IMG/VR virus record: IMGVR_UViG_3300013233_000093
Location: 1 to 64,000 of that record
DNA length: 64,000 nt
Reading direction: 5' to 3' (one strand)
Part shown: one piece after another, positions 1-14,606 of the stretch
Layout: the number at the start of each line of letters is the position of its first letter
How positions within the stretch are numbered: the stretch's first letter is position 1
The notes under the pieces: generated by a model
Told to the model about the DNA's origin: nothing
Database searches by the model: none
The model's input: only the letters and a program-made list of their open reading frames with translations
Translations under genes and position numbers: made by a program

Positions 1-281
1 CCTGTGGGTGCCGGAGGCACCGGAGATGCTATCAGTGGCGACAGCGAAGCTGGGTCGCCCTGACGGATGTCAGATAACCCAACACGTGGACTCGCTGGCG
101 CTCCCCCACCTGTGGGTGGAGCCGCATCACCTGTGGGTGCCGGAGGCACCGGAGATGCTATCAGTGGCGACAGCGAAGCTGGGTCGCCCTGACGGATGTC
201 AGATAACCCAACACGTGGACTCGCTGGCGCTCCCCCACCTGTGGGTGGGGACACATCACCTGTGGGTGCCGGAGGCACCGG
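1..281. repeat. Tandem 129-bp (43-codon) Pro/Gly/Ala-rich repeat inside the tape-measure gene
   Basis: cctgtgggtgccggaggcaccgg recurs at 1, 130 and 259; first two units nearly identical. Confidence 0.95.
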
Positions 282-3200
282 GGGCGTGCCAGACGGTGTA
301 CCGGGAGGCGTTGGAGTTCTTCCTGGAACCGGAGGCGCTCCTTGTGCGCCACCAGCCAGCCATGCAATCATGTCCGTCTGCATGCGCCAAGCACCACCCA
401 CTATACCAGTTCCTCTACGCAAGACAGAAGAACTGTTCCCGCGCATAATACGACCTAAGGGATTTGTAAGACGCGTTCCTAAGCTGGCAGTTAACACCTT
501 CTTACCGTTTTTCTTTAGGAGTCCATCACGCACCTCCGCTGCGGTAAGGATTACATCGCCCTCACGGTTAAGAACCTCGCCGTCGATTTGCTTGTGCTTC
601 TTGATGGTCTTGCCTGTCCTACGACTTATATAGTCCCCACGTTTTAACCCACGCTTTGTCAGTCGCGGAGAATCTTCACCCGGAACATACACGTCGCCCC
701 GGTTAATAAATCCTTTCACAGATCTACCCACCATCTTAGCGATTGCCCATGCAGGTTTTAATAACAAGTGTTTTGCTATTTTACCCTGGAGTTTCCAAGA
801 GGCCTTGGTGAGTTTGATGAAGTTTCTAGCCACGTTCCGAAGCTTACCGGTACGGTTGCCAAACAGACCGGTTTGTAAATCCAATGCAGACACCACCTCC
901 TCACCTTTAGCGTCTATTACAGGGCCGTCAATGTCGCCGACCTTATGGATGACGTTACCAGTAGCTTTGTCGAAGTAACGACCTAAGCGCATGCCTCTCG
1001 CAGTCATCACAGGCGCCTTTTGCCGGGCAACGTAGATGTCTTGCGTGAAGAGATCTTTTACACCTCCACCAACTGCCTTACGAACGACGGATAGCGGATT
1101 ACGGATCAGTTTAGATAACCCGTTATCCTCGCCCAGGTATTGCCCGATGAAATCGGCTACCTTGTTAGCGCCCTGCTTTACAACGTTGTTGGTGTTCACT
1201 GCGTTATTAATGGTGTCGCCTACTGAGTTTGTGGTTTTGTTTCCACTTACTACATCGCCTGCTACGCGTGAAACCTTGTTGTAATACGAAGACACCATGT
1301 CAGCGGCATCGCCTGCACCAGACCGCATGCCACGTAAGACGCCAGATGAATCTCCAGTAATTGTACCAGACGCATCGCCTGCCTCCGCACCACTGGACTG
1401 TGATATGGATTGCAGTAAGACATGTTCTGTTGCAAAGTTACCGTCGATCGCTTTGACGACTTCTTCTAACCCCACGCGCATCGCCGATACAGCGGGGTCT
1501 TCTTCACCTGAAGTGATCTTAGCCTGACTTACATCGAGCGGTGCTTTGGACGTCGGTGCTAATACACCTGCGTTGTTCTGCATGTCGATTACAACCGGCG
1601 ATACCGCACCGAGTGTGTTTATGTCTGGCGTACCCGCGATGATCGTTTCAGTGGCTTGTAGGAGCGCAACTTTTAACGCCGACGCGGTACTTTGCTTGGT
1701 GGTTTCACTGGTGTTCTCCGTGACGGCATCGCTGGTGTTTTGTGATGGCCGCTCTGTGCCGTCCCAGGATATAGACGCTATCAGTGCGCTTAATGACTCT
1801 GGCAGATTGGTTACCTGACCATCTTCTTCCGGCTTGGTTGCAGCTGCTTCCTTAGGCTTAGGCAATTCACTTGTCTCACCTAACTGCACACCTTCTAACG
1901 CCGAAGCTAGGCCGTGACTGGTAGACGATGCATCGGTATACTTACTCACATCAGTATCGACTGTCTCTGTCCTAGACTCCACGAGGTTGATAATCGCATT
2001 TAGCGCATTATTAGCCACGTTGGCAGTCGAAGATTTGACACTCTTTACTGACTGGTCAAGTCCGATGGACTCACTGGCGTTACTCATCCCGTTTGTAAAT
2101 ACAGACTTTATGTCTGCGAAGGATACGGGACGTGAAGACATGTCACGGTACTTTGCATTAGTAACATCCACATTACTGAGTATGTCACTTCTTGCAGTGT
2201 CACCTGCAAACGCATAGTTAGCATACCCACCAACGGATTCTGATTTATCCGTTTCCTTAGACTTAAACACTTCTGACAATGTCGATACAGGGGACGAGTT
2301 AACGATTCCCTTAGATATGGCATTGTACCGATTAGTTATAGTCTCTCCTGGCGCTACCTGTAGTGCGATTAGCTCGTCGTTTACGGCTGACACAGTTGAC
2401 TCTACGTTACTTATCACAGAAGTAAGCGTTTCGTCCAGACGTTTACCCACCTTGGTATCCATCACTGTAGACGCTGCATCGCTGGTTGCGTACCTAGCAG
2501 TTTTAAGTGTGTCCTGCAAGGACGTCGAGGCTTTGGAATTCACAGCGCTGTTCACTAGGTCGTGTAGACTGCGTGATGTGGTGAGTGCCTTGTCTGTCTC
2601 GTTATGCACGGACGCCAGCGTTTCGTTTATGTTACTGTTGGAGGCGGAAGAATCGTCCGTACTTGTAGACGCACTCGCGTCGTCGGCAACACGTCCAATG
2701 GTATCGAAGATAGACGTTGTCTTATTCTCATCGGTGGACGATGTTAAATCGTTTACGACTGACGAAATAGACTTATACGCATCAGTGGACTTGGCCTTTG
2801 TCTGAAGCTTTGATACCGAGTTGCTAACGCTATCATACTTACGTGATACTGAGTCATGCAGGTCCGTAACCCGACTGCTGTTCATCACGTCGTTTAATAC
2901 GTTACCCACGCCGCGTTTTGTCGCGGGCGGTGTCTCTTCTCCTGCATGGTTGCCAGGTGGTTGGGTAGGGAGGTCTTCGGAGGCACCTGCGTTACCGTCA
3001 ACACTAGATATGTCTGCGTCTGTCTTGCCCGGTGTGCGAGTGAAGGTTTCGTCTATGGCAGTGGTTAACTCACTCCACGCCGTCGATAAATTGGCCTTGG
3101 CCTTTGTCCTGGCTTCTTCGATTACCAGCTTAGCATACGCCCGCGCCTCCGATTTACTTACATGCTCCAGATTTTCCTCCCCATATCGGACAGCGCTGGT

Positions 3201-6200
3201 GGATGTGCGGATGTCAGAACGGTTAGCTGCATGATCTTCTGTCGCTGCATCTGCGGCGTTGTCTATAGACTCCTGTACGGGCGTGACCACGTTGACTGCA
3301 TCGGCGCTTGTCGCTGACGGAGTGTTATAAATCTCGCGTATTGCCCTAACCAGAGTGGAGACCGTATGTCCGTCGAGCGAACTGTTTGTGTCTCCACCAT
3401 GGCCATCAACAACGACGGTCGTAGCGGGTTTCGGCGTGACCGCTGCCTTTGCGTTATCTGCTATGGTTCGAAGTGACAGGCTGGGCTTACCCACAGCGTC
3501 TTCCACAGTTGTGGCCTTTACCACAGCATCGCTAGCCGACTCTACTGCACCCTTTGCCTTAGTGGAAGAGAACTGTCGCTTGCCTTCTGTATCCACATCT
3601 GTCACGGCATCCAGAGCAGTCTCTTTAGCTGACTGCGCTAATGCAAGTCCTGTCTTGCCGACGGTAGTGGCAGATTTAAAACCGGCAGTCAGTCCGCTTG
3701 TCAGCTTACCTAACGCGGCATTGGCGGTTTTCTTACCAGCAGTAGTTGTGGCGTTTACGTCGATGCTACGTTTACCGTCTTCATCCACAACTGTAAAGTC
3801 ATTAAGCATGTCATTCTTAATGGATGATGCAGTTTTGCTAATCTCATCAAGCTTCGCATTTGCTTCCGTGGACAGATGTTTACGAGACTCGGTTACTGCA
3901 GTGGAGATGTTAGACTCCACAAAGCTAAGTGACTTATTAGCTACATCAGTGACCTTACTTGTCACAGTAGACGTAGCATCGCTTACTGTGGACTTGATCG
4001 TAGACGCAGTGGTCGTAAGTCTATCCACCAGGCTTTGGTTTGCAGCTAAGTTACCCGCTAACTGATCACTGATCGTGCTAAGGACCGATGCGATTGACGT
4101 ATCGCTTGATGCATTGGACGTGGTATCCGCACTGAGGTTAGAGGTTACCGTTATGCCCTTTGAGGTAACAACGACCGCATCTCTGATCTCGGTGAGCAGA
4201 TCTAGCTGATTTGACGTGGCCATCTCCATAGTGGATTGGCTTATCTCGTCGAGCAAGTCACGCAAGTCGGTGGTGTCGCAACAATCGTCACGATCTGCAG
4301 TGCTTGTTAAGATACGATCCGCTTCTTCTGCAGAAACGATTTTTGTATCACTGGTGGTCGTAGCCGTGCGTATGTATTCAGCCAGCTCGCTTTGTACCTC
4401 CATGGACAGTTCGGTAGCGGTGCTTATTTCGTGCAGTACGTCTACGACCGATGTGGAACTGGCTATGGTCTGCGTAGACGCGTTTATCTCGCCCAGTATA
4501 GCAGTCAGTTTGCCACAGCACTCGTCAAAGGATGCGCCGCCCGTGCCTGCCGGTGACGGTGTGCCTGGCGTGGGACTGTCTGGTGCACCTGCAGGAGGTG
4601 GTGTGGGTGGCTGTATTAACGGACCATTCAATAACGCGTTTGGCCCCTTCCTACCCAGCTTGAACTGCTCTAACGCCTCCATGTCGACCTGTGGGTTCCC
4701 AGAGGAATCCATGGTAATCAGACCCAATCGTTCTAGTGACTCTCGCTTACCGTTGAACATCAAGTTCTTGGTAATGTCGTTAAACTCAGACGAGCGTGTG
4801 TTAATACGACTAAACGAGTTTATCGCAGTGGACACCTTATCGTGATCACGTTCATTGTCGGCAGCCGCCATGACCTGCTCGATCTCAGTAGCCACATCGC
4901 TTGAACTGTAAAGCGTGTTTTTATCACTACTGGTATCCACGTAGTCTTTGGAAACAAATCCACCGCGTTTATCCCTCTGGGTGATAAAGCGCTCTATTAA
5001 CTCTTCCCTTGCTGTGGATGACAACGCGCCCACTGTGTCTATCGCATCTACCGCCTTACCTGCCTGTGTGCGAACTTGCATTTGTGCATCACGAGTGATG
5101 ACGGAATTAGCCACATCCATATCTTGCTGACTGTTCGTAATGAACTGCATCTTGTCCTGTGAATAAACAAGTCGCTCGTTCTTAGTACCAGTGGCAATGT
5201 TGGTTGTCTGTTCAAGGATGCGGGCGAGGTAACCTGGAATAGTAACGTTGATTGTGTTATGCGTTGTTGAATCGCTTAACGACGCACTTACGTTCTTCAT
5301 TTGACCAACTGTGTCACCTAGCGTGATACGATCGTTGAACACGGGGACTACCGACTTAAGCGCCTTTCCGGCCATATTAGCCGCAGACTCTACGCTAAAC
5401 GGCTTGGCTGCCTTTGCCATTGCAGCAAGTGCGTTGTTCTTCCAGCCGTAACCGTCGTTTGAATCAAACTCTTCATCCGACATCTTACCTTGCAACAAAC
5501 GCCTAGCTGCTCTTCGTGCCACGCCCTCGTCACGCTTATCAGAGTCCATCCTAGAACCATCGGCATTATAGTTAATAGTGCCATAGTTCTCTTCTCTGTA
5601 TCGCAGATCTGCCTTGCGTGCACGCTCTTCTTCGGCTAACGCACGCTCGTGTGCACGCCGCTGTCTGCTTAACTCTACTTCCGTCTGACGTGCATCAGCC
5701 TGTGTTTCACCGCCTAATTTGCCGGTGAGCGATACACTGGCATCTTCTATGGATTGCCTGGCGCCCTCTGCTACGTCTGAAATAGAGCTCGCTATACGTT
5801 TAAAGAACGTGGTGTCGGTAAGATCCTGATCACCTTCTGCGTACGCTGATGCCTCTGCTGCCGCGTTCTTCGTAAAATTACGACTGGCTCTGGCCATCGA
5901 CATCATCAATTTGTTATTTGATATCTTAAGCGCCAACGGAGCAGCTAACTTTTCAGCGCCCGCCTCTAGTCCCATCTCGGACGCCATGGCACCCATCATC
6001 TTTAAGCGGTCGGATCGACTCATCTCGCCAAAGCTGTCCCCGGACATGTCCGCGGTGCCCTGTGCCATACCCACAGCGTCCTTAACTACGGCGACACCTG
6101 CCATGGCTTTTTTCTGAATGGTGCCCTGTGCATTCTCTGTGTACTGGTCTGTAAAGTTCGTTACGGTATCTGCGATGGTTTCGTACATGCGCTCATCTAA

Positions 6201-6995
6201 CGTGGAACCCAGTCGTTCCGACATGCGACTCTTTACAATGTCCGGCAAGCCTGTATTCTTTTGTATGTTTTGAAGGAGCTTTGTAGCCCCATCAAAAAAC
6301 GGTTTGGACAATTCTACGAGTTCTTTAGTCGCAAAGAAAATACGATGTTGCAGTTCCAAGTGCTTACGCTGGTAGTCTATCAGCACGGTGTCTTGATAAC
6401 TAGCCAGTTTAGATACGGCAGACGCGATCTTTTGATTGACGTCTACGTTCTCTTCGTGCTGTGCGGTTGTACGTACGGCGTCTGCGTTGTTTACCGCGAC
6501 TTCGTAGTCCAGCTTGGCTGCGTCTGCCTTGGTCTCACGATCAAAGATGCCTGCCAAAGAAGTCTGAATCTGTGCTTCTTTTACGTCTACACGGTCAGGC
6601 GTTTGATAGCCCAGATCGTTAGCGAACTCCTTAACCGTGGAAGCCATGAATTCAGGTAAGAATTTATCCACCATGGCCTCGTTTTTAACGAGGAGTTTCT
6701 TTACTCCCAAAATGGCAGGTTCGAGTTCCTTCTCTGCCTTAGCTATGGTGTCTGAAACAAAGTCCATGCCACCGCCAATGGCGCTGTCAAGTTCTTGATA
6801 TTCAGTAGGCAATGCGTTACGGCGGATCGCATTACCGGCAACTTCGGATATTTTATCTTTAGTAATAGCGTCGAGTACGCCGGTCTTTATGGAATCAGCA
6901 GGCGAGCGATCGCCAGACGAATCCTCGTCCGCCTCCTCAAACCCGTCGAACTCATCCATATCGTCTAGAAAATCATCGTCGTCAAAATCTGACAT
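1..6995 (-). CDS. Tail tape-measure / tail-associated protein, phiKZ gp181-like (partial, >2330 aa, runs off left end)
   Basis: ATG at 6995 (MSDFDDDDFLDDMDEFDGF) with GAGGA RBS; absent from ORF track because no stop in window; + strand shadow ORFs at 196, 1036, 2317, 3355, 4216 and 6889 share one frame; motifs YQRKHLELQHR, TGLPDIVK, IPGYLARIL and two D(I/V)YV...IDGxV modules; divergent from vRNAP beta' as in phiKZ. Confidence 0.8.
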   Translation of the reverse strand, partial: MSDFDDDDFLDDMDEFDGFEEADEDSSGDRSPADSIKTGVLDAITKDKISEVAGNAIRRNALPTEYQELDSAIGGGMDFVSDTIAKAEKELEPAILGVKKLLVKNEAMVDKFLPEFMASTVKEFANDLGYQTPDRVDVKEAQIQTSLAGIFDRETKADAAKLDYEVAVNNADAVRTTAQHEENVDVNQKIASAVSKLASYQDTVLIDYQRKHLELQHRIFFATKELVELSKPFFDGATKLLQNIQKNTGLPDIVKSRMSERLGSTLDERMYETIADTVTNFTDQYTENAQGTIQKKAMAGVAVVKDAVGMAQGTADMSGDSFGEMSRSDRLKMMGAMASEMGLEAGAEKLAAPLALKISNNKLMMSMARASRNFTKNAAAEASAYAEGDQDLTDTTFFKRIASSISDVAEGARQSIEDASVSLTGKLGGETQADARQTEVELSRQRRAHERALAEEERARKADLRYREENYGTINYNADGSRMDSDKRDEGVARRAARRLLQGKMSDEEFDSNDGYGWKNNALAAMAKAAKPFSVESAANMAGKALKSVVPVFNDRITLGDTVGQMKNVSASLSDSTTHNTINVTIPGYLARILEQTTNIATGTKNERLVYSQDKMQFITNSQQDMDVANSVITRDAQMQVRTQAGKAVDAIDTVGALSSTAREELIERFITQRDKRGGFVSKDYVDTSSDKNTLYSSSDVATEIEQVMAAADNERDHDKVSTAINSFSRINTRSSEFNDITKNLMFNGKRESLERLGLITMDSSGNPQVDMEALEQFKLGRKGPNALLNGPLIQPPTPPPAGAPDSPTPGTPSPAGTGGASFDECCGKLTAILGEINASTQTIASSTSVVDVLHEISTATELSMEVQSELAEYIRTATTTSDTKIVSAEEADRILTSTADRDDCCDTTDLRDLLDEISQSTMEMATSNQLDLLTEIRDAVVVTSKGITVTSNLSADTTSNASSDTSIASVLSTISDQLAGNLAANQSLVDRLTTTASTIKSTVSDATSTVTSKVTDVANKSLSFVESNISTAVTESRKHLSTEANAKLDEISKTASSIKNDMLNDFTVVDEDGKRSIDVNATTTAGKKTANAALGKLTSGLTAGFKSATTVGKTGLALAQSAKETALDAVTDVDTEGKRQFSSTKAKGAVESASDAVVKATTVEDAVGKPSLSLRTIADNAKAAVTPKPATTVVVDGHGGDTNSSLDGHTVSTLVRAIREIYNTPSATSADAVNVVTPVQESIDNAADAATEDHAANRSDIRTSTSAVRYGEENLEHVSKSEARAYAKLVIEEARTKAKANLSTAWSELTTAIDETFTRTPGKTDADISSVDGNAGASEDLPTQPPGNHAGEETPPATKRGVGNVLNDVMNSSRVTDLHDSVSRKYDSVSNSVSKLQTKAKSTDAYKSISSVVNDLTSSTDENKTTSIFDTIGRVADDASASTSTDDSSASNSNINETLASVHNETDKALTTSRSLHDLVNSAVNSKASTSLQDTLKTARYATSDAASTVMDTKVGKRLDETLTSVISNVESTVSAVNDELIALQVAPGETITNRYNAISKGIVNSSPVSTLSEVFKSKETDKSESVGGYANYAFAGDTARSDILSNVDVTNAKYRDMSSRPVSFADIKSVFTNGMSNASESIGLDQSVKSVKSSTANVANNALNAIINLVESRTETVDTDVSKYTDASSTSHGLASALEGVQLGETSELPKPKEAAATKPEEDGQVTNLPESLSALIASISWDGTERPSQNTSDAVTENTSETTKQSTASALKVALLQATETIIAGTPDINTLGAVSPVVIDMQNNAGVLAPTSKAPLDVSQAKITSGEEDPAVSAMRVGLEEVVKAIDGNFATEHVLLQSISQSSGAEAGDASGTITGDSSGVLRGMRSGAGDAADMVSSYYNKVSRVAGDVVSGNKTTNSVGDTINNAVNTNNVVKQGANKVADFIGQYLGEDNGLSKLIRNPLSVVRKAVGGGVKDLFTQDIYVARQKAPVMTARGMRLGRYFDKATGNVIHKVGDIDGPVIDAKGEEVVSALDLQTGLFGNRTGKLRNVARNFIKLTKASWKLQGKIAKHLLLKPAWAIAKMVGRSVKGFINRGDVYVPGEDSPRLTKRGLKRGDYISRRTGKTIKKHKQIDGEVLNREGDVILTAAEVRDGLLKKNGKKVLTASLGTRLTNPLGRIMRGNSSSVLRRGTGIVGGAWRMQTDMIAWLAGGAQGAPPVPGRTPTPPGTPSGTPPVPPAPTGDVSPPTGGGAPASPRVGLSDIRQGDPASLSPLIASPVPPAPTGDAAPPTGGGAPASPRVGLSDIRQGDPASLSPLIASPVPPAPT

Positions 6996-7048
6996 GGTCT
7001 TATCCTCATTTAATACAAAGTATCCGCTTATAAAAGGCATGCCTCATT

Positions 7049-8689
7049 ATGAACAACAAAGACATCGCGTTTAACATTAAGATCATGAGTCCAGACAGAG
7101 AGTCGATACGCGGTATGTTGCCTGTATCTACTATGGACATGTACGACAATAACACGGGGGATTACCATCCACAAGGGCTGTACTCTAACGTCATCTTTGG
7201 TCGTGTGGGTACTGACTTACGGAACGAGTCTCACGGGTTTATTAACCTGCGGACGAGTATACTGCATCCTAAGTTGTTTGACGAGCTTATACGACTTAAA
7301 GGACTTTATCGAGCTGTGATGTCTGGCAGTGAGTTTGCAGTGTGGGATAAAAAGAAGCGTGACTTTATAAAGTCTGATATGCTTGACGGTGAAACTGGAT
7401 ATGCGTTTTTTAAGTCGCATTTTGAAGAGCTTAATCTGGTGAAGAACAAGTCGGTGCAGCGAGCTGCTCGCATCGATCTGTTAAACAAATACCGCAAGTC
7501 TGCTTATGCGGATTTCCAAGTCGTGGCACCCGCGGGTCTAAGGGATGCAAAAACTGACGAGACGGGAAGAACCATCGAGGTGGATGTCAACAAAACGTAT
7601 CGTCGTATTATGGCATTAGCCAGCACGATACCTGAAACACTGATCGACAGTGAAGACACCACGTTAGACCGTACTCGTTATAGTCTACAGTTGGCCATTA
7701 ACGAGTTGTGGAAATACCACGTTATGTTAATCGGTGGTAAGAACGGTTTTCTCGAAGCTAAGTTTGGCAGTCGTAAGGTGGAGTATGGCACGACGAACGT
7801 CATGTCTAGTATGGATCCTGCTAGTGCTGATATGAATGGCGCTACGGCCATGGACGTCACCAATACACAAATAGGCTTGCATCAGTTCCTGAAGTCCACC
7901 GAACCTATGGCGGTGGGTTACTACATCCCACACGGGATCGCTGAGGACGTGTACATCAATGCAGACGGAGACGTGGAACTTATCGAGCCTAAGACGCTTA
8001 CGCCTGTGTCTGTAAAGTTGAGCGAGAAGGAACGTACTCTGTGGGGAACCGAGGAAGGCTTGTCTACGTTGATAAACAACTTCGACGTGGTGGACATCCG
8101 GCACGAACCCGTGATGATCGCAGGCAAGTACCTTGCCATGATCTATCGAGATCGTAAGAACTTCAAAGTCATCCGGGATATGGAATCTGTGCCGGATCGT
8201 ATAAACCGTGCGTACATTAAACCGTTGACATGGGCTGAGTTCTTTTACATCACTGCGATGTCTTACGAGAATAAAGCACGGGCTTATGTGAACCGTTATC
8301 CTATTGTCGGGACGGGGTCGATCTACTTCAGTAAGATGTATTTGAAAACCACCATCAAAGGCGTGGTGTTGCGTGAGATGACCGATGACTTCTTAGAGAG
8401 TACGACGAATCCAGATTACCCTGAGTTTCCAGACACGGAGAATAAGGGTTCGTTCATGGACACCACTGCCCCGCATGTCAGCCAGCTGGCGAACCTTAAG
8501 GGCGATTACGATGGCGATAGGAGTTCTACGACTGCGGTAACATCCGACGAGGCAGTAAAGGAAGTGGACGACAAGATAAATGATCCTGCCACGCACCTAA
8601 CGCCTGACGGTGGTTTAGTGCAGCCGTCGGACAGTGACATCATTGACTGGGTATTTAAGAACTTCACGGGGTTTAAAGACTATGCTTAA
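7049..8689 (+). CDS. Virion RNA polymerase beta' subunit, catalytic part (phiKZ gp180-like)
   Basis: HPQGLYSNVIFG, catalytic GDYDGD (DxDGD) motif, NRYPI, APAGLRD; ~550 aa, upstream of large beta subunit. Confidence 0.92.
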   Translation: MNNKDIAFNIKIMSPDRESIRGMLPVSTMDMYDNNTGDYHPQGLYSNVIFGRVGTDLRNESHGFINLRTSILHPKLFDELIRLKGLYRAVMSGSEFAVWDKKKRDFIKSDMLDGETGYAFFKSHFEELNLVKNKSVQRAARIDLLNKYRKSAYADFQVVAPAGLRDAKTDETGRTIEVDVNKTYRRIMALASTIPETLIDSEDTTLDRTRYSLQLAINELWKYHVMLIGGKNGFLEAKFGSRKVEYGTTNVMSSMDPASADMNGATAMDVTNTQIGLHQFLKSTEPMAVGYYIPHGIAEDVYINADGDVELIEPKTLTPVSVKLSEKERTLWGTEEGLSTLINNFDVVDIRHEPVMIAGKYLAMIYRDRKNFKVIRDMESVPDRINRAYIKPLTWAEFFYITAMSYENKARAYVNRYPIVGTGSIYFSKMYLKTTIKGVVLREMTDDFLESTTNPDYPEFPDTENKGSFMDTTAPHVSQLANLKGDYDGDRSSTTAVTSDEAVKEVDDKINDPATHLTPDGGLVQPSDSDIIDWVFKNFTGFKDYA

Positions 8690-11600
8690 AATCGATCAGT
8701 ACATGGTAAAATGGGTAGCACGTAAGCGAGAGCAGATGGCAACCAAGCCATTACTCGCACACGGTGATTTGGACTTACCTGTATATACCACAATACACCA
8801 TGCGTCAGACGCAGCTAACGATTACGGCATTCGTAAATCGCATGTGCTCTTACAAGCCACTCTTCGTTACGTACGAGTCTACCATGAAATCCATGGGATG
8901 TCTGAGCACGGTAATCCCGCTAACCTAACCTACAACGTGGAGCGTACTAAATCGACGTTCTTTAAAGCACGGGGACGTACGTTTAAAAAGGTCACAGATG
9001 TCGCACGTGCCAGTAAGGACAAGAACGGGATCTTTGTGGCGGACTATTCGTTACTGCAAAACATGTTTCGTTATTCTGTTTCTAAGTATGCGGACTTGTA
9101 TGAAACGCGAAACGTCATGGATACGATATGGCGTAACGCTAATAAGTTCGGCGCACATCGCACACAGTTCATCACCTTTAAGATCCCCAAAGTCTTACCT
9201 GACTTTAACCGCATGCGCGTACTGTCAGAAGCCAAGGACGGTTTGATTGTAAGTGAAGTAAGTAAACCCATTACGTGGAACTTGATCGACTTATGGCGAC
9301 GTCTAAACGAGTTTGACTTGCCCGTATCACAAGAAGTGGCTGAGAACACCATCCTGGTCTTCCACAGCGAAGTGAAGATGGCACAGGTACGTCTGAGCGA
9401 TTTGTTTGAATGGATGGCTGACAGCGAGGCACAGACCTTAAAATCGTTTTATGCGATGTTGGTTAAAGTGCATGCTACGCGCGCGGTGACCGAAGTAGCG
9501 ACTGAAGAGGAAGACGACGATGACACGGTTACTGTGGATAAGGACCTTGATTACGAAGGAGGTAGTCAGATCTACAGCAAGGCATTAGAGATGGTGGAAG
9601 CCGGTAAGATGTCGGCTGCGCAAGCTGTGCGATTTAAGAAAATGGGCACGTCCTATAAGACCATTGAATCGTTTTCAGGCAACGGTACTCTGGAAGAAGA
9701 TCTGGATACCGATGTGGCGAGTATGGCGATGGGAAGTGATATTCCCATTATGAATAAAAAGCCCTTTATCCTAGATGACTCCATGCACTACTCGTCTATT
9801 GACGTTATGGATAAAGTCTATCGTGAGAACTACTTGCACAAACACGTGTCTCAGATGGTCGTCGGATTACAGACAGCGGGTGCTGTTGTAAAGGACATCA
9901 AGAAACAAGTACACGTAGACGCGATGAATCGTATCGAAAGATACACGGTTAAAATTGTGCCTGTGGTGGGTAAAGAATCCACACTGCACTTCCAACTGCC
10001 TGTGGTGGACGAAGACGGTGCGTTTTACGTCAGTGGAATAAAGCGCAGGTTAGATCCACAGAGAGTTGATTTGCCCATTCGTAAAGCGGGCTCAGATAAA
10101 GTCGCACTCACCTCTTATGCAGGCAAGGCCTTTGTTATTAGAAGTCCTAATGCTAATGCAAACGTAAGTCGCTGGATCACCAAGTTGATTGCTAACGATG
10201 CAATGAGTGGTCCTGGTAAGAAGATTACAAACTTGGTTATGAACAACAGTCAGTTGTCTCAGGCTAAGACACCGCGATTATACAGTGCGGTCGGAATGGG
10301 GGTTGGTTCCTTTACTGCAAACGGCGTGGACTTTAGTTTCCTCTATGACGAACGTGAAGCTGTGTATGGTAAGATCGGTAAGATAGAGCGCGACGGTCTG
10401 GTGGTGTGCGGTAAACGTAAATCTGACGGCGCTTTGGTTACAATGGACGAGGGTGGTTATCTTAACATAGGAGCTACGAAGCTTGGTATGTTGCCTCAGT
10501 TTATAAACTCCGACTGGCCTACCCCTCCTGTGGAATATGCCATGTTGCAAACGTATGGCAAGAAGGTACCTTTGGCACTAGCACTTGCGTCTAAAATGGG
10601 ACTCCGTAAACTGCTTAGACTGATTAAAGCGAAATCAAGATGGTTGGATCCAGGAGTACGTTTGGACTTACAACCCGGTGAGTTTCGTATTACATTTAAA
10701 GACTCCTCTTTGATCGTAGACGGCAGTGATCCAAAGGTACGACTTATCATGGGCGGCTTTACTGCCGTTAACCGTGTGACTAAGTTGTATCGTGCTAAGG
10801 AGTTCAACAAACCCGGTATCTATGGCACTGTGCTGGAAGACCTTAAGATCGGCAGACATGTGCTGGCTGAGATTACATTGATGTATGACATGTTCGTCGA
10901 TCCCATCACTCGCGATATCTTACGTGAGATGAAAGAACCTGAAGTATTCCAAGACCTGTTGCTGCGTAGTGCAGAACTGTTAATGGACGATCAATGGGTA
11001 GACGAGATGGACACACGGTTTATGCGATCACGTGGATACGAACGCTTCGCAGGATTTGTCTATAAGCGTCTTATGGATGCAGTTCGTGAACAGCGTAAGA
11101 ATCCACAGGCTGCTAACTCGGTGATCTCTATGCCGCATCAGGCAGTGATGTCGGACATTATTTCGGACGAGTCGGTAGTTCAAGTGGAGGAGTCCAATCC
11201 CATTCATGCGCTTAAGGAACGAGAAGCCATTACCTTTTCAGGTCAAGGTGGTCGTAGTGCTCAGACCATGGTACAGAAGAGCCGTGTGTTTCACGCTAAC
11301 GACGTTGGGTTCATTTCCGAGTCTGGTCCTGATTCGGCTAAAGTGGGCATCCGGTCTCATCGTGTACCTAATGCCAAGTACAATAGTATCTTTGGCACCA
11401 CGGATCGTTTCGACTATGATAAAGACGGGGTGTCTTCTGCGTTCTCCTCTGCAGCACTGATCTCTCCCGGGGCGTCACACAACGATCCAAAGCGTATTGC
11501 GCTTGGCGATATCCAGTGGTCGTCCATGGTTAGTGCTACCGGTGCTATTATTGTACCGTTGCGTACTGGGTATGAAATGGTAATCGCGGATCGTGTAGGT

Positions 11601-12974
11601 GATCTATTTGCGGTATCTGCTAGGGAAGACGGGGTTGTGTCTGCGGTAGAGAAAGACGCGGTTATGGTTCGGTATAAATCCATAGCTCAATTTGTACCCG
11701 GCGATGTCTATAAGTCAGGCGATGTTGTGCTTGATTGTAACGTCATACGTGGTGAGAAGTACGGCAAACAAGCCACCTTTATGCAGACCGATAAAATAAC
11801 TAAGTTACCTAAAGTCTCCAGTAAAGAGTTGATTGGCGTTAAGCCACAACACGCCGCCATTGTCATTGCAACCGATGACGGATATACAGTGATCTCTAAC
11901 GCCGCTGTAGTGGCCTTGGCAAAGCAAGAGAAGCGTTCTGTGTTCCCGGTGTTTATCCTAGCACCCGCGACCATAAAACGCTTAAACGGCAAGCGTGCTA
12001 AATCTGCTAAAGACGTGTTCGATGCAGAGGCACTCGCCGGAGTTGAGATTGGTTATGAGTTAGGCGTTCGCCACGGCAAAGCGGCTGGTGCGATCATCCC
12101 GCATTCTAAAGTAACGAATCTTAAGAAGGGCGATAAGTTTGTCAAGGGCGATATACTCGCCTGGAACGAAAACTACTTTGCACGGGATTACCTTAACCCT
12201 GGAGGCGTAACGCTTAAGATGGGTGTGCTGGAAAGAACACTTCTTATCGAGACCAAAGAGACCTACGAGGATAGTTCCGCTATCTCCAGGGATCTTGGAC
12301 ATGCGTTACGCACACCCACTGCCAAGGAGAAAACAATCTTTGTTAACTTCGATCAGGTGATTCATAACTTGTTGCCTATAGGTAGTGACGTAGAGCCCTC
12401 CACTATTTTATGCGCCATTGAGGAGTCTGCCACGGCGGACGTACTGGACGATGAGGAAGGTTTGTCTGGGTTAACACGGCTTGCGGCTAGTGTGCCTAAG
12501 GCAGGGTTTAAGGGTAAGATCATGTCAATAGACATGACCTACATGGGCGACATAGCGGACATGTCGCCTTCACTTGCAGGTATTGTCAAAGCAGATGCTA
12601 AGGCACGACGTCGTAAACGTTCTGTACTGAAGGACAGTTCCATCGCACAGACTGCTGAGATTAAAGAGTCCGTGTTCTTTGGCGGGCAGCGCGTTACTGA
12701 GAATACACTGTCTATTGTAATTACAATGGATGTTGAGAACATCGCTGAGTCGGGAGACAAGATTGTCTTTGATGCGTCTCTTAAGTCTATCATATCTGAG
12801 ATGATCGAGGGCAGTGACCATACTGAGGACGGCCAGCCCATTCACGCACGCACAAGTTATCGCGGCGTCGCGGCACGTACCGTGTTATCGCCTGAGTTAT
12901 CAGGCCCAACCAACACCGCATTGTTAGAAATCACTAAGCTTGCGGCTGACGTATATTTTAAAGGGAGTAAGTAA
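8682..12974 (+). CDS. Virion RNA polymerase beta subunit (phiKZ gp178-like)
   Basis: DLPIRK, VALTSYAGK, RGYERFAG, GFISESGPDSAKVG, TYEDSSAIS, GDKIVF; probable start MLKIDQY overlaps upstream stop. Confidence 0.92.
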   Translation: MLKIDQYMVKWVARKREQMATKPLLAHGDLDLPVYTTIHHASDAANDYGIRKSHVLLQATLRYVRVYHEIHGMSEHGNPANLTYNVERTKSTFFKARGRTFKKVTDVARASKDKNGIFVADYSLLQNMFRYSVSKYADLYETRNVMDTIWRNANKFGAHRTQFITFKIPKVLPDFNRMRVLSEAKDGLIVSEVSKPITWNLIDLWRRLNEFDLPVSQEVAENTILVFHSEVKMAQVRLSDLFEWMADSEAQTLKSFYAMLVKVHATRAVTEVATEEEDDDDTVTVDKDLDYEGGSQIYSKALEMVEAGKMSAAQAVRFKKMGTSYKTIESFSGNGTLEEDLDTDVASMAMGSDIPIMNKKPFILDDSMHYSSIDVMDKVYRENYLHKHVSQMVVGLQTAGAVVKDIKKQVHVDAMNRIERYTVKIVPVVGKESTLHFQLPVVDEDGAFYVSGIKRRLDPQRVDLPIRKAGSDKVALTSYAGKAFVIRSPNANANVSRWITKLIANDAMSGPGKKITNLVMNNSQLSQAKTPRLYSAVGMGVGSFTANGVDFSFLYDEREAVYGKIGKIERDGLVVCGKRKSDGALVTMDEGGYLNIGATKLGMLPQFINSDWPTPPVEYAMLQTYGKKVPLALALASKMGLRKLLRLIKAKSRWLDPGVRLDLQPGEFRITFKDSSLIVDGSDPKVRLIMGGFTAVNRVTKLYRAKEFNKPGIYGTVLEDLKIGRHVLAEITLMYDMFVDPITRDILREMKEPEVFQDLLLRSAELLMDDQWVDEMDTRFMRSRGYERFAGFVYKRLMDAVREQRKNPQAANSVISMPHQAVMSDIISDESVVQVEESNPIHALKEREAITFSGQGGRSAQTMVQKSRVFHANDVGFISESGPDSAKVGIRSHRVPNAKYNSIFGTTDRFDYDKDGVSSAFSSAALISPGASHNDPKRIALGDIQWSSMVSATGAIIVPLRTGYEMVIADRVGDLFAVSAREDGVVSAVEKDAVMVRYKSIAQFVPGDVYKSGDVVLDCNVIRGEKYGKQATFMQTDKITKLPKVSSKELIGVKPQHAAIVIATDDGYTVISNAAVVALAKQEKRSVFPVFILAPATIKRLNGKRAKSAKDVFDAEALAGVEIGYELGVRHGKAAGAIIPHSKVTNLKKGDKFVKGDILAWNENYFARDYLNPGGVTLKMGVLERTLLIETKETYEDSSAISRDLGHALRTPTAKEKTIFVNFDQVIHNLLPIGSDVEPSTILCAIEESATADVLDDEEGLSGLTRLAASVPKAGFKGKIMSIDMTYMGDIADMSPSLAGIVKADAKARRRKRSVLKDSSIAQTAEIKESVFFGGQRVTENTLSIVITMDVENIAESGDKIVFDASLKSIISEMIEGSDHTEDGQPIHARTSYRGVAARTVLSPELSGPTNTALLEITKLAADVYFKGSK

Positions 12975-13165
12975 TGATCGGATCTGACGATTTAGAATCA
13001 CATCGTACTGTTTCAAACGCGATTATGCTTGGCGATGCCATCATTCGCACACTGGGCTTGGACGACGGGGCGATCGGTAACGACACCATGACTGCCGAGT
13101 TGCTGGCGGACGAGTTGCATTACAAAGTAGAACGCGTCACCAGAGGCAAGCATCATGTTGAGTAA
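12974..13165 (+). CDS. Small hypothetical protein
   Basis: TAATG coupling to vRNAP beta stop; overlaps next start. Confidence 0.6.
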   Translation: MIGSDDLESHRTVSNAIMLGDAIIRTLGLDDGAIGNDTMTAELLADELHYKVERVTRGKHHVE

Positions 13166-14606
13166 AACACAAGCAGACAACTCCGTTAACGCCGCAGAGC
13201 GCGTGACGTATTCTGGTCTACTGGCTGAACCCAAGAGCACCACGCCTCTTGAGTTTATTCGAAACCAGACTGTGGTCATCCACGACGATGTGGATAGCCG
13301 TGATGAATTAGCAGGCATTCTCATTGCGGATACAAACCGCCCTCTGGCGCTGATCGACAAAGTGTCAGCCGACGGCATTAGCGTCTACCCACACGCCAAC
13401 GCGTTACGTGAGATGGCCGGCATACACGCAAAACGTCTGGGTAATTCCTTTGCGTATGCTAAAAACACCATCGCCCCTGTTTGTAAAGCCGTTGTGAAAC
13501 GATGTGAAGAAGAGATCAACGGCGGCGTCTGGAAAGACATTAACGTTGTAACCAATGAAATCCCAAAGGTCTATCGCAGCCCTTTGTTATCCACGCTGGC
13601 ACGCAGCATTTTACGTCCAGAGACTAACTCTTCTGACACAAGTCAGTTTAAAGACATCGAAGGACTGAATGCAGTTGTCGGTGATTTGACACTGAGCATG
13701 GTGCGCGATGTAATGCATCTCGGAGTAGCTGAGTTCGATGAGCAGTTAGACGCGTTACTGGCCGTACCTGATGTTGCGGAGATTGCAAAACACCCAAGCA
13801 ATTTATTGAACGGGTATTTCAAGGACGGTGTAGATGGCTGGAATCTGTTTCATTCACACGGTGCACTGTTATCCTATTTGTTCGCTACTGGATTACTAAA
13901 CGGCAACGGCGGGTTCTTTGATAACCAAGCTGCCACTCTAGATGAAGTGGGTTTGCTAAAGACCATCGCACGCAGAGCGGGTTGGGCTATCCAACAACGA
14001 CTGGCGGTTATTGCATCAAGCGATGAGCACGGTAAGATTATCCTTAAGCGGGATAACTACAATGTCTTCGTTAATGCAAGCGCGTATAACGCATGGCTTA
14101 AAGAAGGCGGCAGTGTTGAAGGGTTGCTGGGGTATTGTTTACAGCACAGCAGTGACATGTCTACTAGCAGTGCAGACATGGCGTTGAAAACGGCACCGGA
14201 TCACTGGACACGGGTGTATAAACAACATCGCATGCGCGAAAGTGCAGTAGAACAAGTCAAGCTTAATCGCGTCATTGACAAAGTTGTCTATCGCGGCATT
14301 GTAGACGCATTGCAAGAAGAGCATGGCGCGGAAAGCGCTGTCTGTCATATCGCCATCGACAAGGCAGCCAAGCAGCTTAAGGAAACGCGTTACTACTCAG
14401 CAATGGACTTAAACAATTACGTCCTGCAGTGCGTGTGCAAGATCATGTCAAATGACAAGAACGATTCCTACGAGATCTTAATGGGCATTCGCCAGTATCT
14501 GGATGAGAATCCTGAAGGTACTATGACACAGGCTAAACGCGTGGCTGCTACTAAGCTGGTCTGTAAATGGTTGGTAAGTCAAATCGACATCAGAAAACAA
14601 GGGTAA
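13155..14606 (+). CDS. Conserved phiKZ-family protein (gp177-like)
   Basis: 483-aa ORF; synteny between vRNAP beta and gp176/gp175-like genes. Confidence 0.65.
   Translation: MLSKTQADNSVNAAERVTYSGLLAEPKSTTPLEFIRNQTVVIHDDVDSRDELAGILIADTNRPLALIDKVSADGISVYPHANALREMAGIHAKRLGNSFAYAKNTIAPVCKAVVKRCEEEINGGVWKDINVVTNEIPKVYRSPLLSTLARSILRPETNSSDTSQFKDIEGLNAVVGDLTLSMVRDVMHLGVAEFDEQLDALLAVPDVAEIAKHPSNLLNGYFKDGVDGWNLFHSHGALLSYLFATGLLNGNGGFFDNQAATLDEVGLLKTIARRAGWAIQQRLAVIASSDEHGKIILKRDNYNVFVNASAYNAWLKEGGSVEGLLGYCLQHSSDMSTSSADMALKTAPDHWTRVYKQHRMRESAVEQVKLNRVIDKVVYRGIVDALQEEHGAESAVCHIAIDKAAKQLKETRYYSAMDLNNYVLQCVCKIMSNDKNDSYEILMGIRQYLDENPEGTMTQAKRVAATKLVCKWLVSQIDIRKQG

What the first reader, a model, noticed from the sequence alone, without database searches (positions are those of the whole stretch)
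11680..12050. ~120-aa insertion in vRNAP beta resembling a degenerate ParB/Srx domain
Seen: between VMVRYKS and GYELGVRHG lies a long segment including AIVIATDDGYTVISNAAVVALAKQEKRSVFPVFIL. This follows the ParB/Srx pattern PIxV...GYxIxDGxxR..A....g...iPV, but the GxxR motif is replaced by SNAAV. From memory, homologs link these two strands with only a few residues. No intein termini are present. Inference: a captured, catalytically dead domain grafted onto a virion RNAP.
Basis: inference. Interest (0 to 1): 0.6.

Follow-up and report, generated by a model that had tools for sequence, protein, structure and literature searches.

The report
Orphan insertion in jumbo-phage virion RNAP beta
A giant phage's virion RNA polymerase beta subunit carries a real, translated extra segment of about 120 residues at a surface hairpin; it has no detectable relatives, and its resemblance to ParB/sulfiredoxin domains is no better than chance.

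Summary
Window 8634/8682..12974 (+) encodes the orthologue of phiKZ gp178, the virion RNA polymerase beta-like subunit. The gene order matches phiKZ gp181 to gp175. Residues 1017-1139 (nt 11682-12050) form a net 119-residue insertion. phiKZ gp178 has 2 residues there. It is absent from 28 of 31 metagenomic homologues and from all 41 sampled cultured jumbo phages with both flanks aligned.

The site is the hairpin tip of the N-terminal sandwich-barrel hybrid motif of beta (T. thermophilus beta about 616-622). The segment is in frame, and its GC content and codon usage match the rest of the gene. It shows no intron, intein or boundary-repeat signature.

I found no relative of the insert in any collection searched. 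The apparent hits in the 1.84-billion-protein search are repeat-summing artefacts.

The ParB/Srx reading fails every sequence test. A ParB_N profile scores the insert at -0.5 bits, and 26% of shuffled copies do as well. Both AlphaFold2 runs left the insert below pLDDT 50, so its fold is undetermined.

A distant clade of orthologues carries an unrelated insert of about 100 residues at the same hairpin, so the site is permissive.

Best reading: an orphan, lineage-specific accessory domain, comparable to the lineage-specific inserts of bacterial RNA polymerase. Its function is only inferred. Interest is modest.

The parts
8682..12974 (+). Gene for the gp178-type virion RNA polymerase beta-like subunit. 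It is 1430 aa from ATG 8682; the open frame begins at GTG 8634, giving 1446 aa. Residue numbers in this report count from 8634.
   Evidence: PHROG 3148 (E = 0, 1108 bits) and PHROG 14872. 33-35% identity to phiKZ gp178 in three segments, best E 3e-113. Gene order as in phiKZ gp181|gp180|gp178|gp177|gp176|gp175. A profile of the family aligns to T. thermophilus beta 534-656, E 1e-17.
11559..11681 (+). N-terminal half of the beta N-terminal sandwich-barrel hybrid motif (aa 976-1016), ending in the strand VMVRY.
   Evidence: Conserved across the family: T978, G979, Y980, A996, G1000 and Y1014 are invariant or nearly so. Modelled with pLDDT 82-96. Aligns to Tth beta about 577-615.
11682..12050 (+). 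The insertion, aa 1017-1139 (123 residues between the anchors, net 119 more than homologues). The sequence is an orphan: pI 9.4, net charge +5, with a basic patch at aa 1107-1126.
   Evidence: Searches show absence from homologues. with 34, 57 and 59 found no relatives. One search shows native GC, codon usage and reading frame. One search gives the composition. Searches give pLDDT < 50.
11856..11960 (+).
   Evidence: Position. Both low-confidence models place a beta hairpin at 1076-1080 and 1083-1088. The ParB_N profile aligns only 5 residues here, at -0.7 bits.
12051..12170 (+). C-terminal half of the same hybrid motif (aa 1140-1179: GYELGVRHG ... KKGDKFVKGDILAWN).
   Evidence: G1144 and G1166 are invariant. 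pLDDT 84-97. Aligns to Tth beta about 622-656.
7049..8689 (+). Upstream gene, a 546-aa gp180-like vRNAP subunit. Its stop overlaps ATG 8682 of the beta gene by 8 nt.
   Evidence: PHROG 2986, E 2.5e-163. Position as phiKZ gp180.

Best explanation
The segment is a genuine, translated, lineage-specific insertion domain in the virion RNA polymerase beta-like subunit (the gp178 orthologue) of an uncultivated jumbo phage related to phiKZ. It sits at the tip of the beta hairpin of the N-terminal sandwich-barrel hybrid motif. This hairpin is 5-9 residues long in nearly all relatives and in Thermus beta.

The two halves of the host motif remain intact on either side. The roughly 120 extra residues should therefore fold as a separate module protruding from the polymerase, leaving the catalytic double-psi beta-barrel (E1212/D1213, G1374-D-K1376, K1384) untouched.

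By analogy with the lineage-specific inserts of bacterial RNAP (beta-i4, beta-i9, beta'-i6), I infer that it adds a phage-specific interaction surface. Its net positive charge and the basic patch at 1107-1126 make a nucleic-acid or acidic-partner contact the most likely role, for example during packaging into the head, ejection or early transcription. It is unlikely to be an enzymatic activity.

Shown here: the insertion, its site, its coding character, its lack of relatives, and the independent use of the same site by another clade. Inferred: surface exposure, autonomous folding and the interaction function.
For: Insertion relative to homologues:
- 28 of 31 metagenomic homologues lack it.
- phiKZ gp178 lacks it.
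- 41 of 41 sampled cultured jumbo phages lack it, as does SPFM4.

Site: the hairpin in the N-terminal hybrid motif, by profile alignment to Tth beta 534-656. The motif is described for phage and bacterial beta in PMC7824862.

Flanks: modelled with pLDDT 82-97, and they match only bacterial RNAP beta chains in Foldseek.

Coding character:
- The reading frame is open, with 8-14 stops in the other forward frames.
- GC is 47.4%, against 47.6% for the gene and 47.8% for the genome.
- The codon score is +0.29 bits per codon, against 0.272 +/- 0.049 for flanking windows, and is negative in the other five frames.

No Rfam family matches, and there are no boundary repeats.

Composition fits a folded domain: GRAVY +0.07, no low-complexity sequence, pI 9.4.

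Permissive site: the clade P0033/P0035/P0037 has an unrelated insert of about 100 residues at the same hairpin. hhalign gives a probability of 0.1%. The tree gives two separate clades with support 1.0, and the window protein is sister to the insert-less P0003. P0035 sits in the same gene order.

Bacterial precedent for surface-exposed lineage-specific inserts: PMC2939025.
Against: - No fold could be obtained. Both AlphaFold2 runs leave residues 1022-1122 below pLDDT 50, so autonomous folding and exposure are not shown.
- There is only one sequence, so no conservation or selection signal is available.
- I did not compute the three-dimensional surroundings of this hairpin in a polymerase complex, so a partner or nucleic-acid contact is speculation.
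- Bacterial inserts are typically acidic, whereas this one is basic.
Confidence: 0.72

Rival explanations
1. One reading: the insert is a captured, catalytically dead ParB/sulfiredoxin-like domain that might hold DNA or a nucleotide.
For: By eye, aa 1075-1109 can be laid on the ParB pattern (hydrophobic strand, G-Y, hydrophobic strand, helix, I/V-P-V). The insert is basic. The fold is undetermined, so it is not excluded.
Against: - No Pfam, PHROG or NCBIfam hit at E <= 10.
- PF02195 finds nothing in six frames of the genome at E <= 10, while 11 of 14 control genomes respond.
- My own ParB_N profile with filters off gives -0.5 bits. 26% of 2000 shuffles reach that, and P1 ParB scores 9.8 bits.
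- GxxR is absent, and the 58 residues upstream do not align to the N-terminal half of the domain.
- Protein-language-model neighbours never include ParB.
- No donor was found, and codon usage is native.
Confidence: 0.05
2. The insert is a very divergent beta-rich RNAP insertion module of the known kind (a sandwich-barrel hybrid motif or BBM-type unit nested inside the host hybrid motif, as in bacterial beta' SI3). It may have arisen by an old local duplication.
For: - Many bacterial lineage-specific inserts are built from such modules (PMC2939025).
- The start of the insert (PGDVYKSGDVV) resembles the GD-x-V-x-GD turn of the host motif, and AAIVIATDDGYTVI resembles host residues 970-983.
- The nearest named language-model clusters are RNAP fragments and an RPOC_hybrid/Peptidase_M23 cluster.
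- The low-confidence models contain mostly beta strands.
Against: - The local matches have E 6-9 in a tiny search space, which is chance level.
- Profiles of the host motif and of the whole family score the insert no better than shuffles: 0.0 bits with 19% of shuffles reaching it, and -3.8 bits with 35%.
- Atlas scores of 0.79-0.81 are within the noise range stated by the tool.
- No Pfam hit.
Confidence: 0.15
3. The segment is not part of the mature protein or of the real genome. It could be an in-frame intron, an intein or another mobile-element remnant that is removed, or an assembly chimera.
For: Jumbo-phage RNAP genes do host mobile introns and homing endonucleases. Examples are PhiPA3 gp210 between beta fragments and the papers listed. 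The genome is a single metagenomic assembly. Read support could not be checked.
Against: - No Rfam intron or other RNA family at E <= 1.
- A clear frame-0 codon signature equal to the rest of the gene, and an open frame of 123 codons.
- No intein termini or Hint profile (sequence), and no endonuclease.
- No boundary repeats.
- The junctions fall exactly at a hairpin tip with both halves of the host motif intact. A random chimera would rarely produce this.
Confidence: 0.05

Closest known systems
Lineage-specific inserts of bacterial RNA polymerase large subunits (E. coli beta-i4/SI1, beta-i9/SI2, beta-i11, beta'-i6/SI3; nomenclature of Lane and Darst, described in PMC2939025)
   Same: A domain-sized segment of 50-280 residues inserted between conserved blocks of a large subunit. 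It is present in one lineage only and leaves the catalytic core intact. The bacterial examples are surface exposed and act as docking or regulatory surfaces.
   Different: The host is a phage virion RNAP. The site is the hairpin of the N-terminal hybrid motif (about Tth beta 616-622), and I know of no described insert there. The sequence shows no detectable SBHM or BBM2 character. It is basic rather than acidic. It is known from a single genome.
phiKZ gp178, the virion RNAP beta-like subunit (vRNAP = gp178, gp149, gp180, gp80; PMC10612078)
   Same: It is the orthologue: 33-35% identity over three segments, the same neighbours, and almost the same length (1451 vs 1446 aa).
   Different: gp178 has 2 residues where this protein has 121. 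This protein in turn lacks about 115 residues in the N-terminal region (query 376 aligns with gp178 491).
Inserts of about 100 residues in the orthologues P0033, P0035 and P0037 (uncultivated jumbo phages)
   Same: The same hairpin of the same subunit, a similar size, and the same gene order around P0035.
   Different: No sequence relationship (BLAST E > 0.3; hhalign probability 0.1%). They are acidic to neutral, form a separate clade, and have no relatives among cultured phages.
ParB N-terminal / sulfiredoxin domain (Pfam PF02195)
   Same: A similar size (about 95-120 residues) and a loosely similar pattern of hydrophobic strands around a G-Y dipeptide.
   Different: The profile score is at chance level. 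There is no GxxR arginine patch and no N-terminal box. No fold evidence exists.

Membership tests
ParB/Srx (PF02195 ParB_N) | Significant match to the family profile | tested here: not met
   No hit at E <= 10 on the insert or in six frames of the genome. My own profile of 33 ParB_N domains, run with --max, gives -0.5 bits. 26% of 2000 shuffles reach that score, and P1 ParB scores 9.8 bits.
ParB/Srx (PF02195 ParB_N) | GxxR / GERR arginine patch (nucleotide-binding box II) | tested here: not met
ParB/Srx (PF02195 ParB_N) | ParB/Srx alpha/beta fold | tested here: inconclusive
   AlphaFold2 with and without an alignment leaves residues 1022-1122 below pLDDT 50, so no fold search of the insert was meaningful.
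Lineage-specific insertion of a multisubunit RNAP large subunit | Present in one lineage and absent from most homologues, lying between conserved blocks | tested here: met
   The sister protein P0003 lacks it.
Lineage-specific insertion of a multisubunit RNAP large subunit | In frame, with flanking conserved structure and catalytic motifs intact | tested here: met
   Invariant columns are kept on both sides, including E1212, D1213, G1374, D1375, K1376 and K1384. Flanks have pLDDT 82-97. Codon signature is native.
Lineage-specific insertion of a multisubunit RNAP large subunit | Built from SBHM or BBM2 modules (true of many bacterial inserts, but not all) | tested here: inconclusive
   Profile and BLAST comparisons with the host motif are at chance level. 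Weak language-model leads point to RNAP hybrid domains at 0.79-0.81. No fold is available.
Intein | N-terminal Cys/Ser/Thr nucleophile, C-terminal His-Asn followed by Cys/Ser/Thr, and Hint-domain blocks | tested here: not met
   The insert begins with I (after S1016) and ends in V-E-I followed by G. It contains one His and one Cys, both internal. There is no Pfam Hint or intein hit.
Self-splicing intron (group I or II) | Match to an intron covariance model, and non-coding character | tested here: not met
   No Rfam match at E <= 1 over 8000-14000 on both strands. The frame-0 codon score equals that of the gene.
phiKZ gp178-type virion RNAP beta subunit (host protein) | Orthology to gp178 by sequence and gene order, with a separate non-virion beta gene in the same genome | tested here: met
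   for sequence. for gene order. A second beta-like gene of 697 aa (PHROG 3295, E 8e-156) lies at genome 83882-85975.
phiKZ gp178-type virion RNAP beta subunit (host protein) | Physical presence in the virion | not testable with these tools
   This needs virion proteomics. The phage is known only as a metagenomic record.

The most novel reading that the evidence does not exclude
The insert is a newly evolved (orphan-fold) basic domain that gives this phage's injected RNA polymerase a function its relatives lack. One possibility is a tether to the genome end or to an ejection or inner-body protein, so that the enzyme enters the cell with the DNA. Another is a contact with a lineage-specific promoter or host factor. 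The same hairpin serves as a general plug-in site in virion RNAPs, as the unrelated insert in a second clade suggests.
Probability: 0.15. Interest if true: 0.55.

Novelty: new variant of a known kind. Interest (0 to 1): 0.3.

Why it matters
Virion RNA polymerases of phiKZ-like phages have no solved structure that I could find. How they are packaged, ejected and directed to early promoters without a sigma factor is an open question.

A hairpin that has accepted two unrelated domain-sized inserts marks a surface that tolerates cargo. This could be useful for tagging the enzyme, and it may point to where lineage-specific partners dock.

Beyond that, this is one more lineage-specific insert in a large RNAP subunit. 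It is known from a single uncultivated genome, so its immediate importance is limited.

Tried and rejected
1. The exhaustive search of 1.84 billion protein representatives with the insert returned four apparent hits: a 3390-aa plant NLR-type leucine-rich-repeat protein at E 2e-36, and three other long repetitive proteins. Re-alignment shows each stretch scores only 1-7.5 bits. The total is summed over up to 19 near-identical repeats, so I rejected these as artefacts.
2. The word search with the insert, tblastn against phages, the phage's own genome, IMG/VR and metagenome contigs all found nothing.
3. phmmer against PDB sequences gave only a PP2C phosphatase at E 0.25, which is chance.
4. Structure prediction of residues 1005-1150 alone gave mean pLDDT 30.7. 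Prediction of 940-1270 with a 28-row alignment gave good flanks but an insert below 50. Both jobs are now spent, so the insert's fold was never searched.
5. Foldseek with the flank model returns only bacterial RNAP beta chains, which says nothing about the insert.
6. I fetched P1 ParB and ran a word search with it to build a ParB profile. This gave only close P1-type relatives, so I rebuilt the profile from 33 ParB_N domains of bacterial genomes.
7. I sought PF21668 (RPOC_hybrid) domains to build an SBHM profile. None were found in the 41 genomes sampled, so I dropped the idea and used the phage family's own motif.
8. I tried to read the hairpin's surroundings from the E. coli model coordinates in the supplement of PMC2939025. 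The stored file is cut before the beta subunit.
No read-level check was made and read laying was not used.
10. Relatives cannot be drawn for a virus record.
11. I made no complex-prediction job, because no specific binding partner is claimed.

Full report
**What is there.** The window is the first 64 kb of a 222,906-bp virus record with terminal repeats. An open frame at 8634..12974 on the + strand gives 1446 residues from a GTG. The copy in the protein collections starts at M17 (ATG 8682, 1430 aa), which overlaps the stop of the upstream gene by 8 nt. Residue numbers here count from 8634. VMVRYKS is residues 1010-1016 and GYELGVRHG is residues 1140-1148.

**The host protein.** No Pfam model reaches it. 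PHROG 3148 ('RNA polymerase beta subunit') matches at E = 0, and its best stretch ends at residue 1016. PHROG 14872 resumes at residue 1138. tblastn finds 312 phage records, all jumbo phages of the phiKZ type, at 30-37% identity.

The neighbours are:
- a gp181-like giant tail protein on the opposite strand;
- a 546-aa gp180-like RNAP subunit;
- the beta gene;
- a gp177-like gene;
- a gp176-like virion protein;
- the head maturation protease.

This is the order of phiKZ gp181 to gp175. phiKZ gp178 aligns in three segments with best E 3e-113. Gp178, Gp80, Gp149 and Gp180 are the virion RNAP subunits (PMC10612078). A second, very different beta-like gene (697 aa, PHROG 3295) lies at genome 83,882-85,975, as expected for the non-virion enzyme. 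The label 'vRNAP beta' is therefore supported.

**The insertion is real.**
- In a 32-sequence alignment, 28 homologues have 57-61 residues over query positions 990-1165, where this protein has 176.
- phiKZ gp178 has two residues between the tyrosine that ends the first strand and the glycine that opens the second. This protein has 121.
- I ran tblastn with residues 940-1270 and sampled rows down the whole ranking of 293 phage records. Every one of the 41 records in which both flanks aligned spans 579-642 nt, against 993 nt here.
- In SPN3US-like phages only the C-terminal flank aligned. A direct alignment of Salmonella phage SPFM4 shows the short hairpin there too.
- The net gain is 119 residues.

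**Where it sits.** A profile of the family aligns to T. thermophilus beta 534-656 (E 1e-17). The phage consensus around the site aligns with V-R-Y-E-D-G-R-L-V-E-Y-P-L (Tth 613-625, my count from the printed alignment). The insertion replaces the turn of that hairpin, about Tth 616-622. From my memory of the E. coli sequence, this is roughly E. coli beta 737-749. This is the sandwich-barrel hybrid motif N-terminal to the catalytic double-psi beta-barrel. Iyer et al. describe it as shared by phage and bacterial beta subunits (PMC7824862). Both halves of the motif, the E-D pair (1212-1213) and the G-D-K...K motif (1374-1384) are conserved. The flanks are modelled at pLDDT 82-97, and Foldseek matches them only to bacterial beta chains.

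**It is coding sequence native to this genome.**
- GC is 47.4%, against 47.6% for the rest of the gene and 47.8% for the genome. The GC by codon position is alike.
- A codon-usage log-odds trained on the genome's 87 long ORFs gives +0.29 bits per codon in frame. Flanking 369-nt windows give 0.272 +/- 0.049, and the other five frames are negative.
- The other forward frames hold 8 and 14 stops.
- No Rfam family matches at E <= 1, and there are no direct repeats at the boundaries.
- No intein termini are present.
- The antisense ORF at 11708-11992 has no coding signature.

**No relatives.** The insert finds nothing in any of these searches:
- Pfam, PHROGs and NCBIfam at E <= 10;
- PDB sequences;
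- cultured phages;
- the word-indexed collection of 5.8 billion proteins;
- the phage's own six frames;
- IMG/VR;
- metagenome contigs.

The exhaustive HMMER search of 1.84 billion representatives listed four hits besides the protein itself. Re-alignment shows each is a sum of many stretches of 1-7.5 bits over near-identical repeats of long repetitive proteins, the best being a plant NLR-type leucine-rich-repeat protein. These are artefacts. The nearest full-length relative of the whole subunit is only 38-41% identical. This phage lineage is therefore poorly sampled, and the age of the insertion cannot be bracketed closely.

**The ParB/Srx idea.**
- No ParB-clan model matched in the family scans.
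- PF02195 searched over six frames of the whole genome found nothing at E <= 10, while 11 of 14 control genomes responded.
- I built a ParB_N profile from 33 domains taken from bacterial genomes and scored the insert with all HMMER filters off. It gets -0.5 bits, aligning five residues around G-Y-T-V-I. Of 2000 shuffled copies of the insert, 26% score as high or higher, and the best shuffle reaches 8.1 bits. The divergent but genuine ParB of phage P1 scores 9.8 bits.
- The defining GxxR patch is absent.

The resemblance is therefore what chance gives. It cannot be excluded at the level of fold, because AlphaFold2 failed on the insert. The single-sequence run gave mean pLDDT 30.7, and the alignment-based run left residues 1022-1122 below 50. 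The two models agree only on a beta hairpin at 1076-1088 and a short helix near 1125-1134.

**Other origins tested.**
- Local duplication of the host motif or of any part of the protein: BLAST snippets at E 6-9. Profiles of the motif and of the whole family score the insert no better than shuffles.
- Protein-language-model neighbours are all below 0.82, within the noise range the tool states. They are RNAP fragments and an RPOC_hybrid/M23 cluster, never ParB. This is a weak lead towards a hybrid-motif-like module, not evidence.

**A second, independent insert at the same hairpin.** P0033, P0035 and P0037 carry 102-113 extra residues at this exact position. These three are the most distant orthologues in the alignment, and P0035 lies in the same gene order. 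Their inserts are alignable with each other. They are unrelated to this one, acidic to neutral rather than basic, and absent from cultured phages. In a tree of 1373 columns they form one clade (support 1.0). The window protein is sister (support 1.0) to P0003, which has only four extra residues in the hairpin. Two separate insertion events are the parsimonious reading, which marks the hairpin as a permissive and probably exposed site.

**Interpretation.** This is a lineage-specific insertion of the kind well known in bacterial beta and beta' (PMC2939025). Here it occurs in a phage virion RNAP, at a site for which I know of no described insert, and its sequence has no detectable kin.

The composition fits a folded domain: 123 residues, GRAVY +0.07, rich in V, I, A and K, pI 9.4, net charge +5. 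There is a cluster of six net positive charges in 1107-1126. I infer a protruding accessory module that offers a new interaction surface, possibly for nucleic acid. The three-dimensional surroundings of the hairpin were not computed, and no partner is proposed. Nothing points to an enzymatic activity.

**Limits.** The analysis rests on one genome and one sequence. There is no fold.

Noticed in passing
P0033:1282-1394, P0035:1099-1206, P0037:1183-1284 (L044:8001-12548 for P0035): A distant clade of vRNAP beta orthologues from uncultivated jumbo phages carries its own insert of about 100 residues at exactly the same hairpin. It is unrelated in sequence to the one in the window and has no match among cultured phages.
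   Followed up: partly
window 3-7040 (-) and the end of the genome record: The record's 'direct terminal repeat' is an exact 239-bp overlap. The gp181-like giant tail gene on the minus strand runs through the record's origin and reads 3401 aa when the record is circularised. The record start is therefore arbitrary and cuts this gene.
   Followed up: partly
window 8634-8689: The beta frame is open from GTG 8634, but ATG 8682 is the likely start. It overlaps the stop of the upstream gp180-like gene (ending at 8689) by 8 nt, and the database copy begins there.
   Followed up: partly
window 8634-9760 (aa 1-375 of the beta subunit): Relative to phiKZ gp178, this protein lacks about 115 residues in the N-terminal, phage-specific region (query 376 aligns with gp178 491). 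The total length is therefore almost unchanged despite the 119-residue insertion. An acidic run (EEEDDDD) lies near aa 291-297.
   Followed up: no
genome C1:83882-85975 (outside the window; L043:364-2457): A second beta-like subunit of 697 aa (PHROG 3295, E 8e-156; weak PF00562 match). It is presumably the non-virion RNAP beta C-terminal subunit.
   Followed up: partly
search result, (P0053-P0056): HMMER whole-sequence E-values as low as 2e-36 arose purely from summing stretches of 1-7.5 bits over up to 19 near-identical repeats of long repetitive proteins. This is a trap for any short query in this library.
   Followed up: yes
window 11708-11992 (-): A 94-codon antisense open frame lies wholly inside the insert. 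Its codon score is negative, and similar antisense frames occur all along the gene, so it is probably not a gene.
   Followed up: yes
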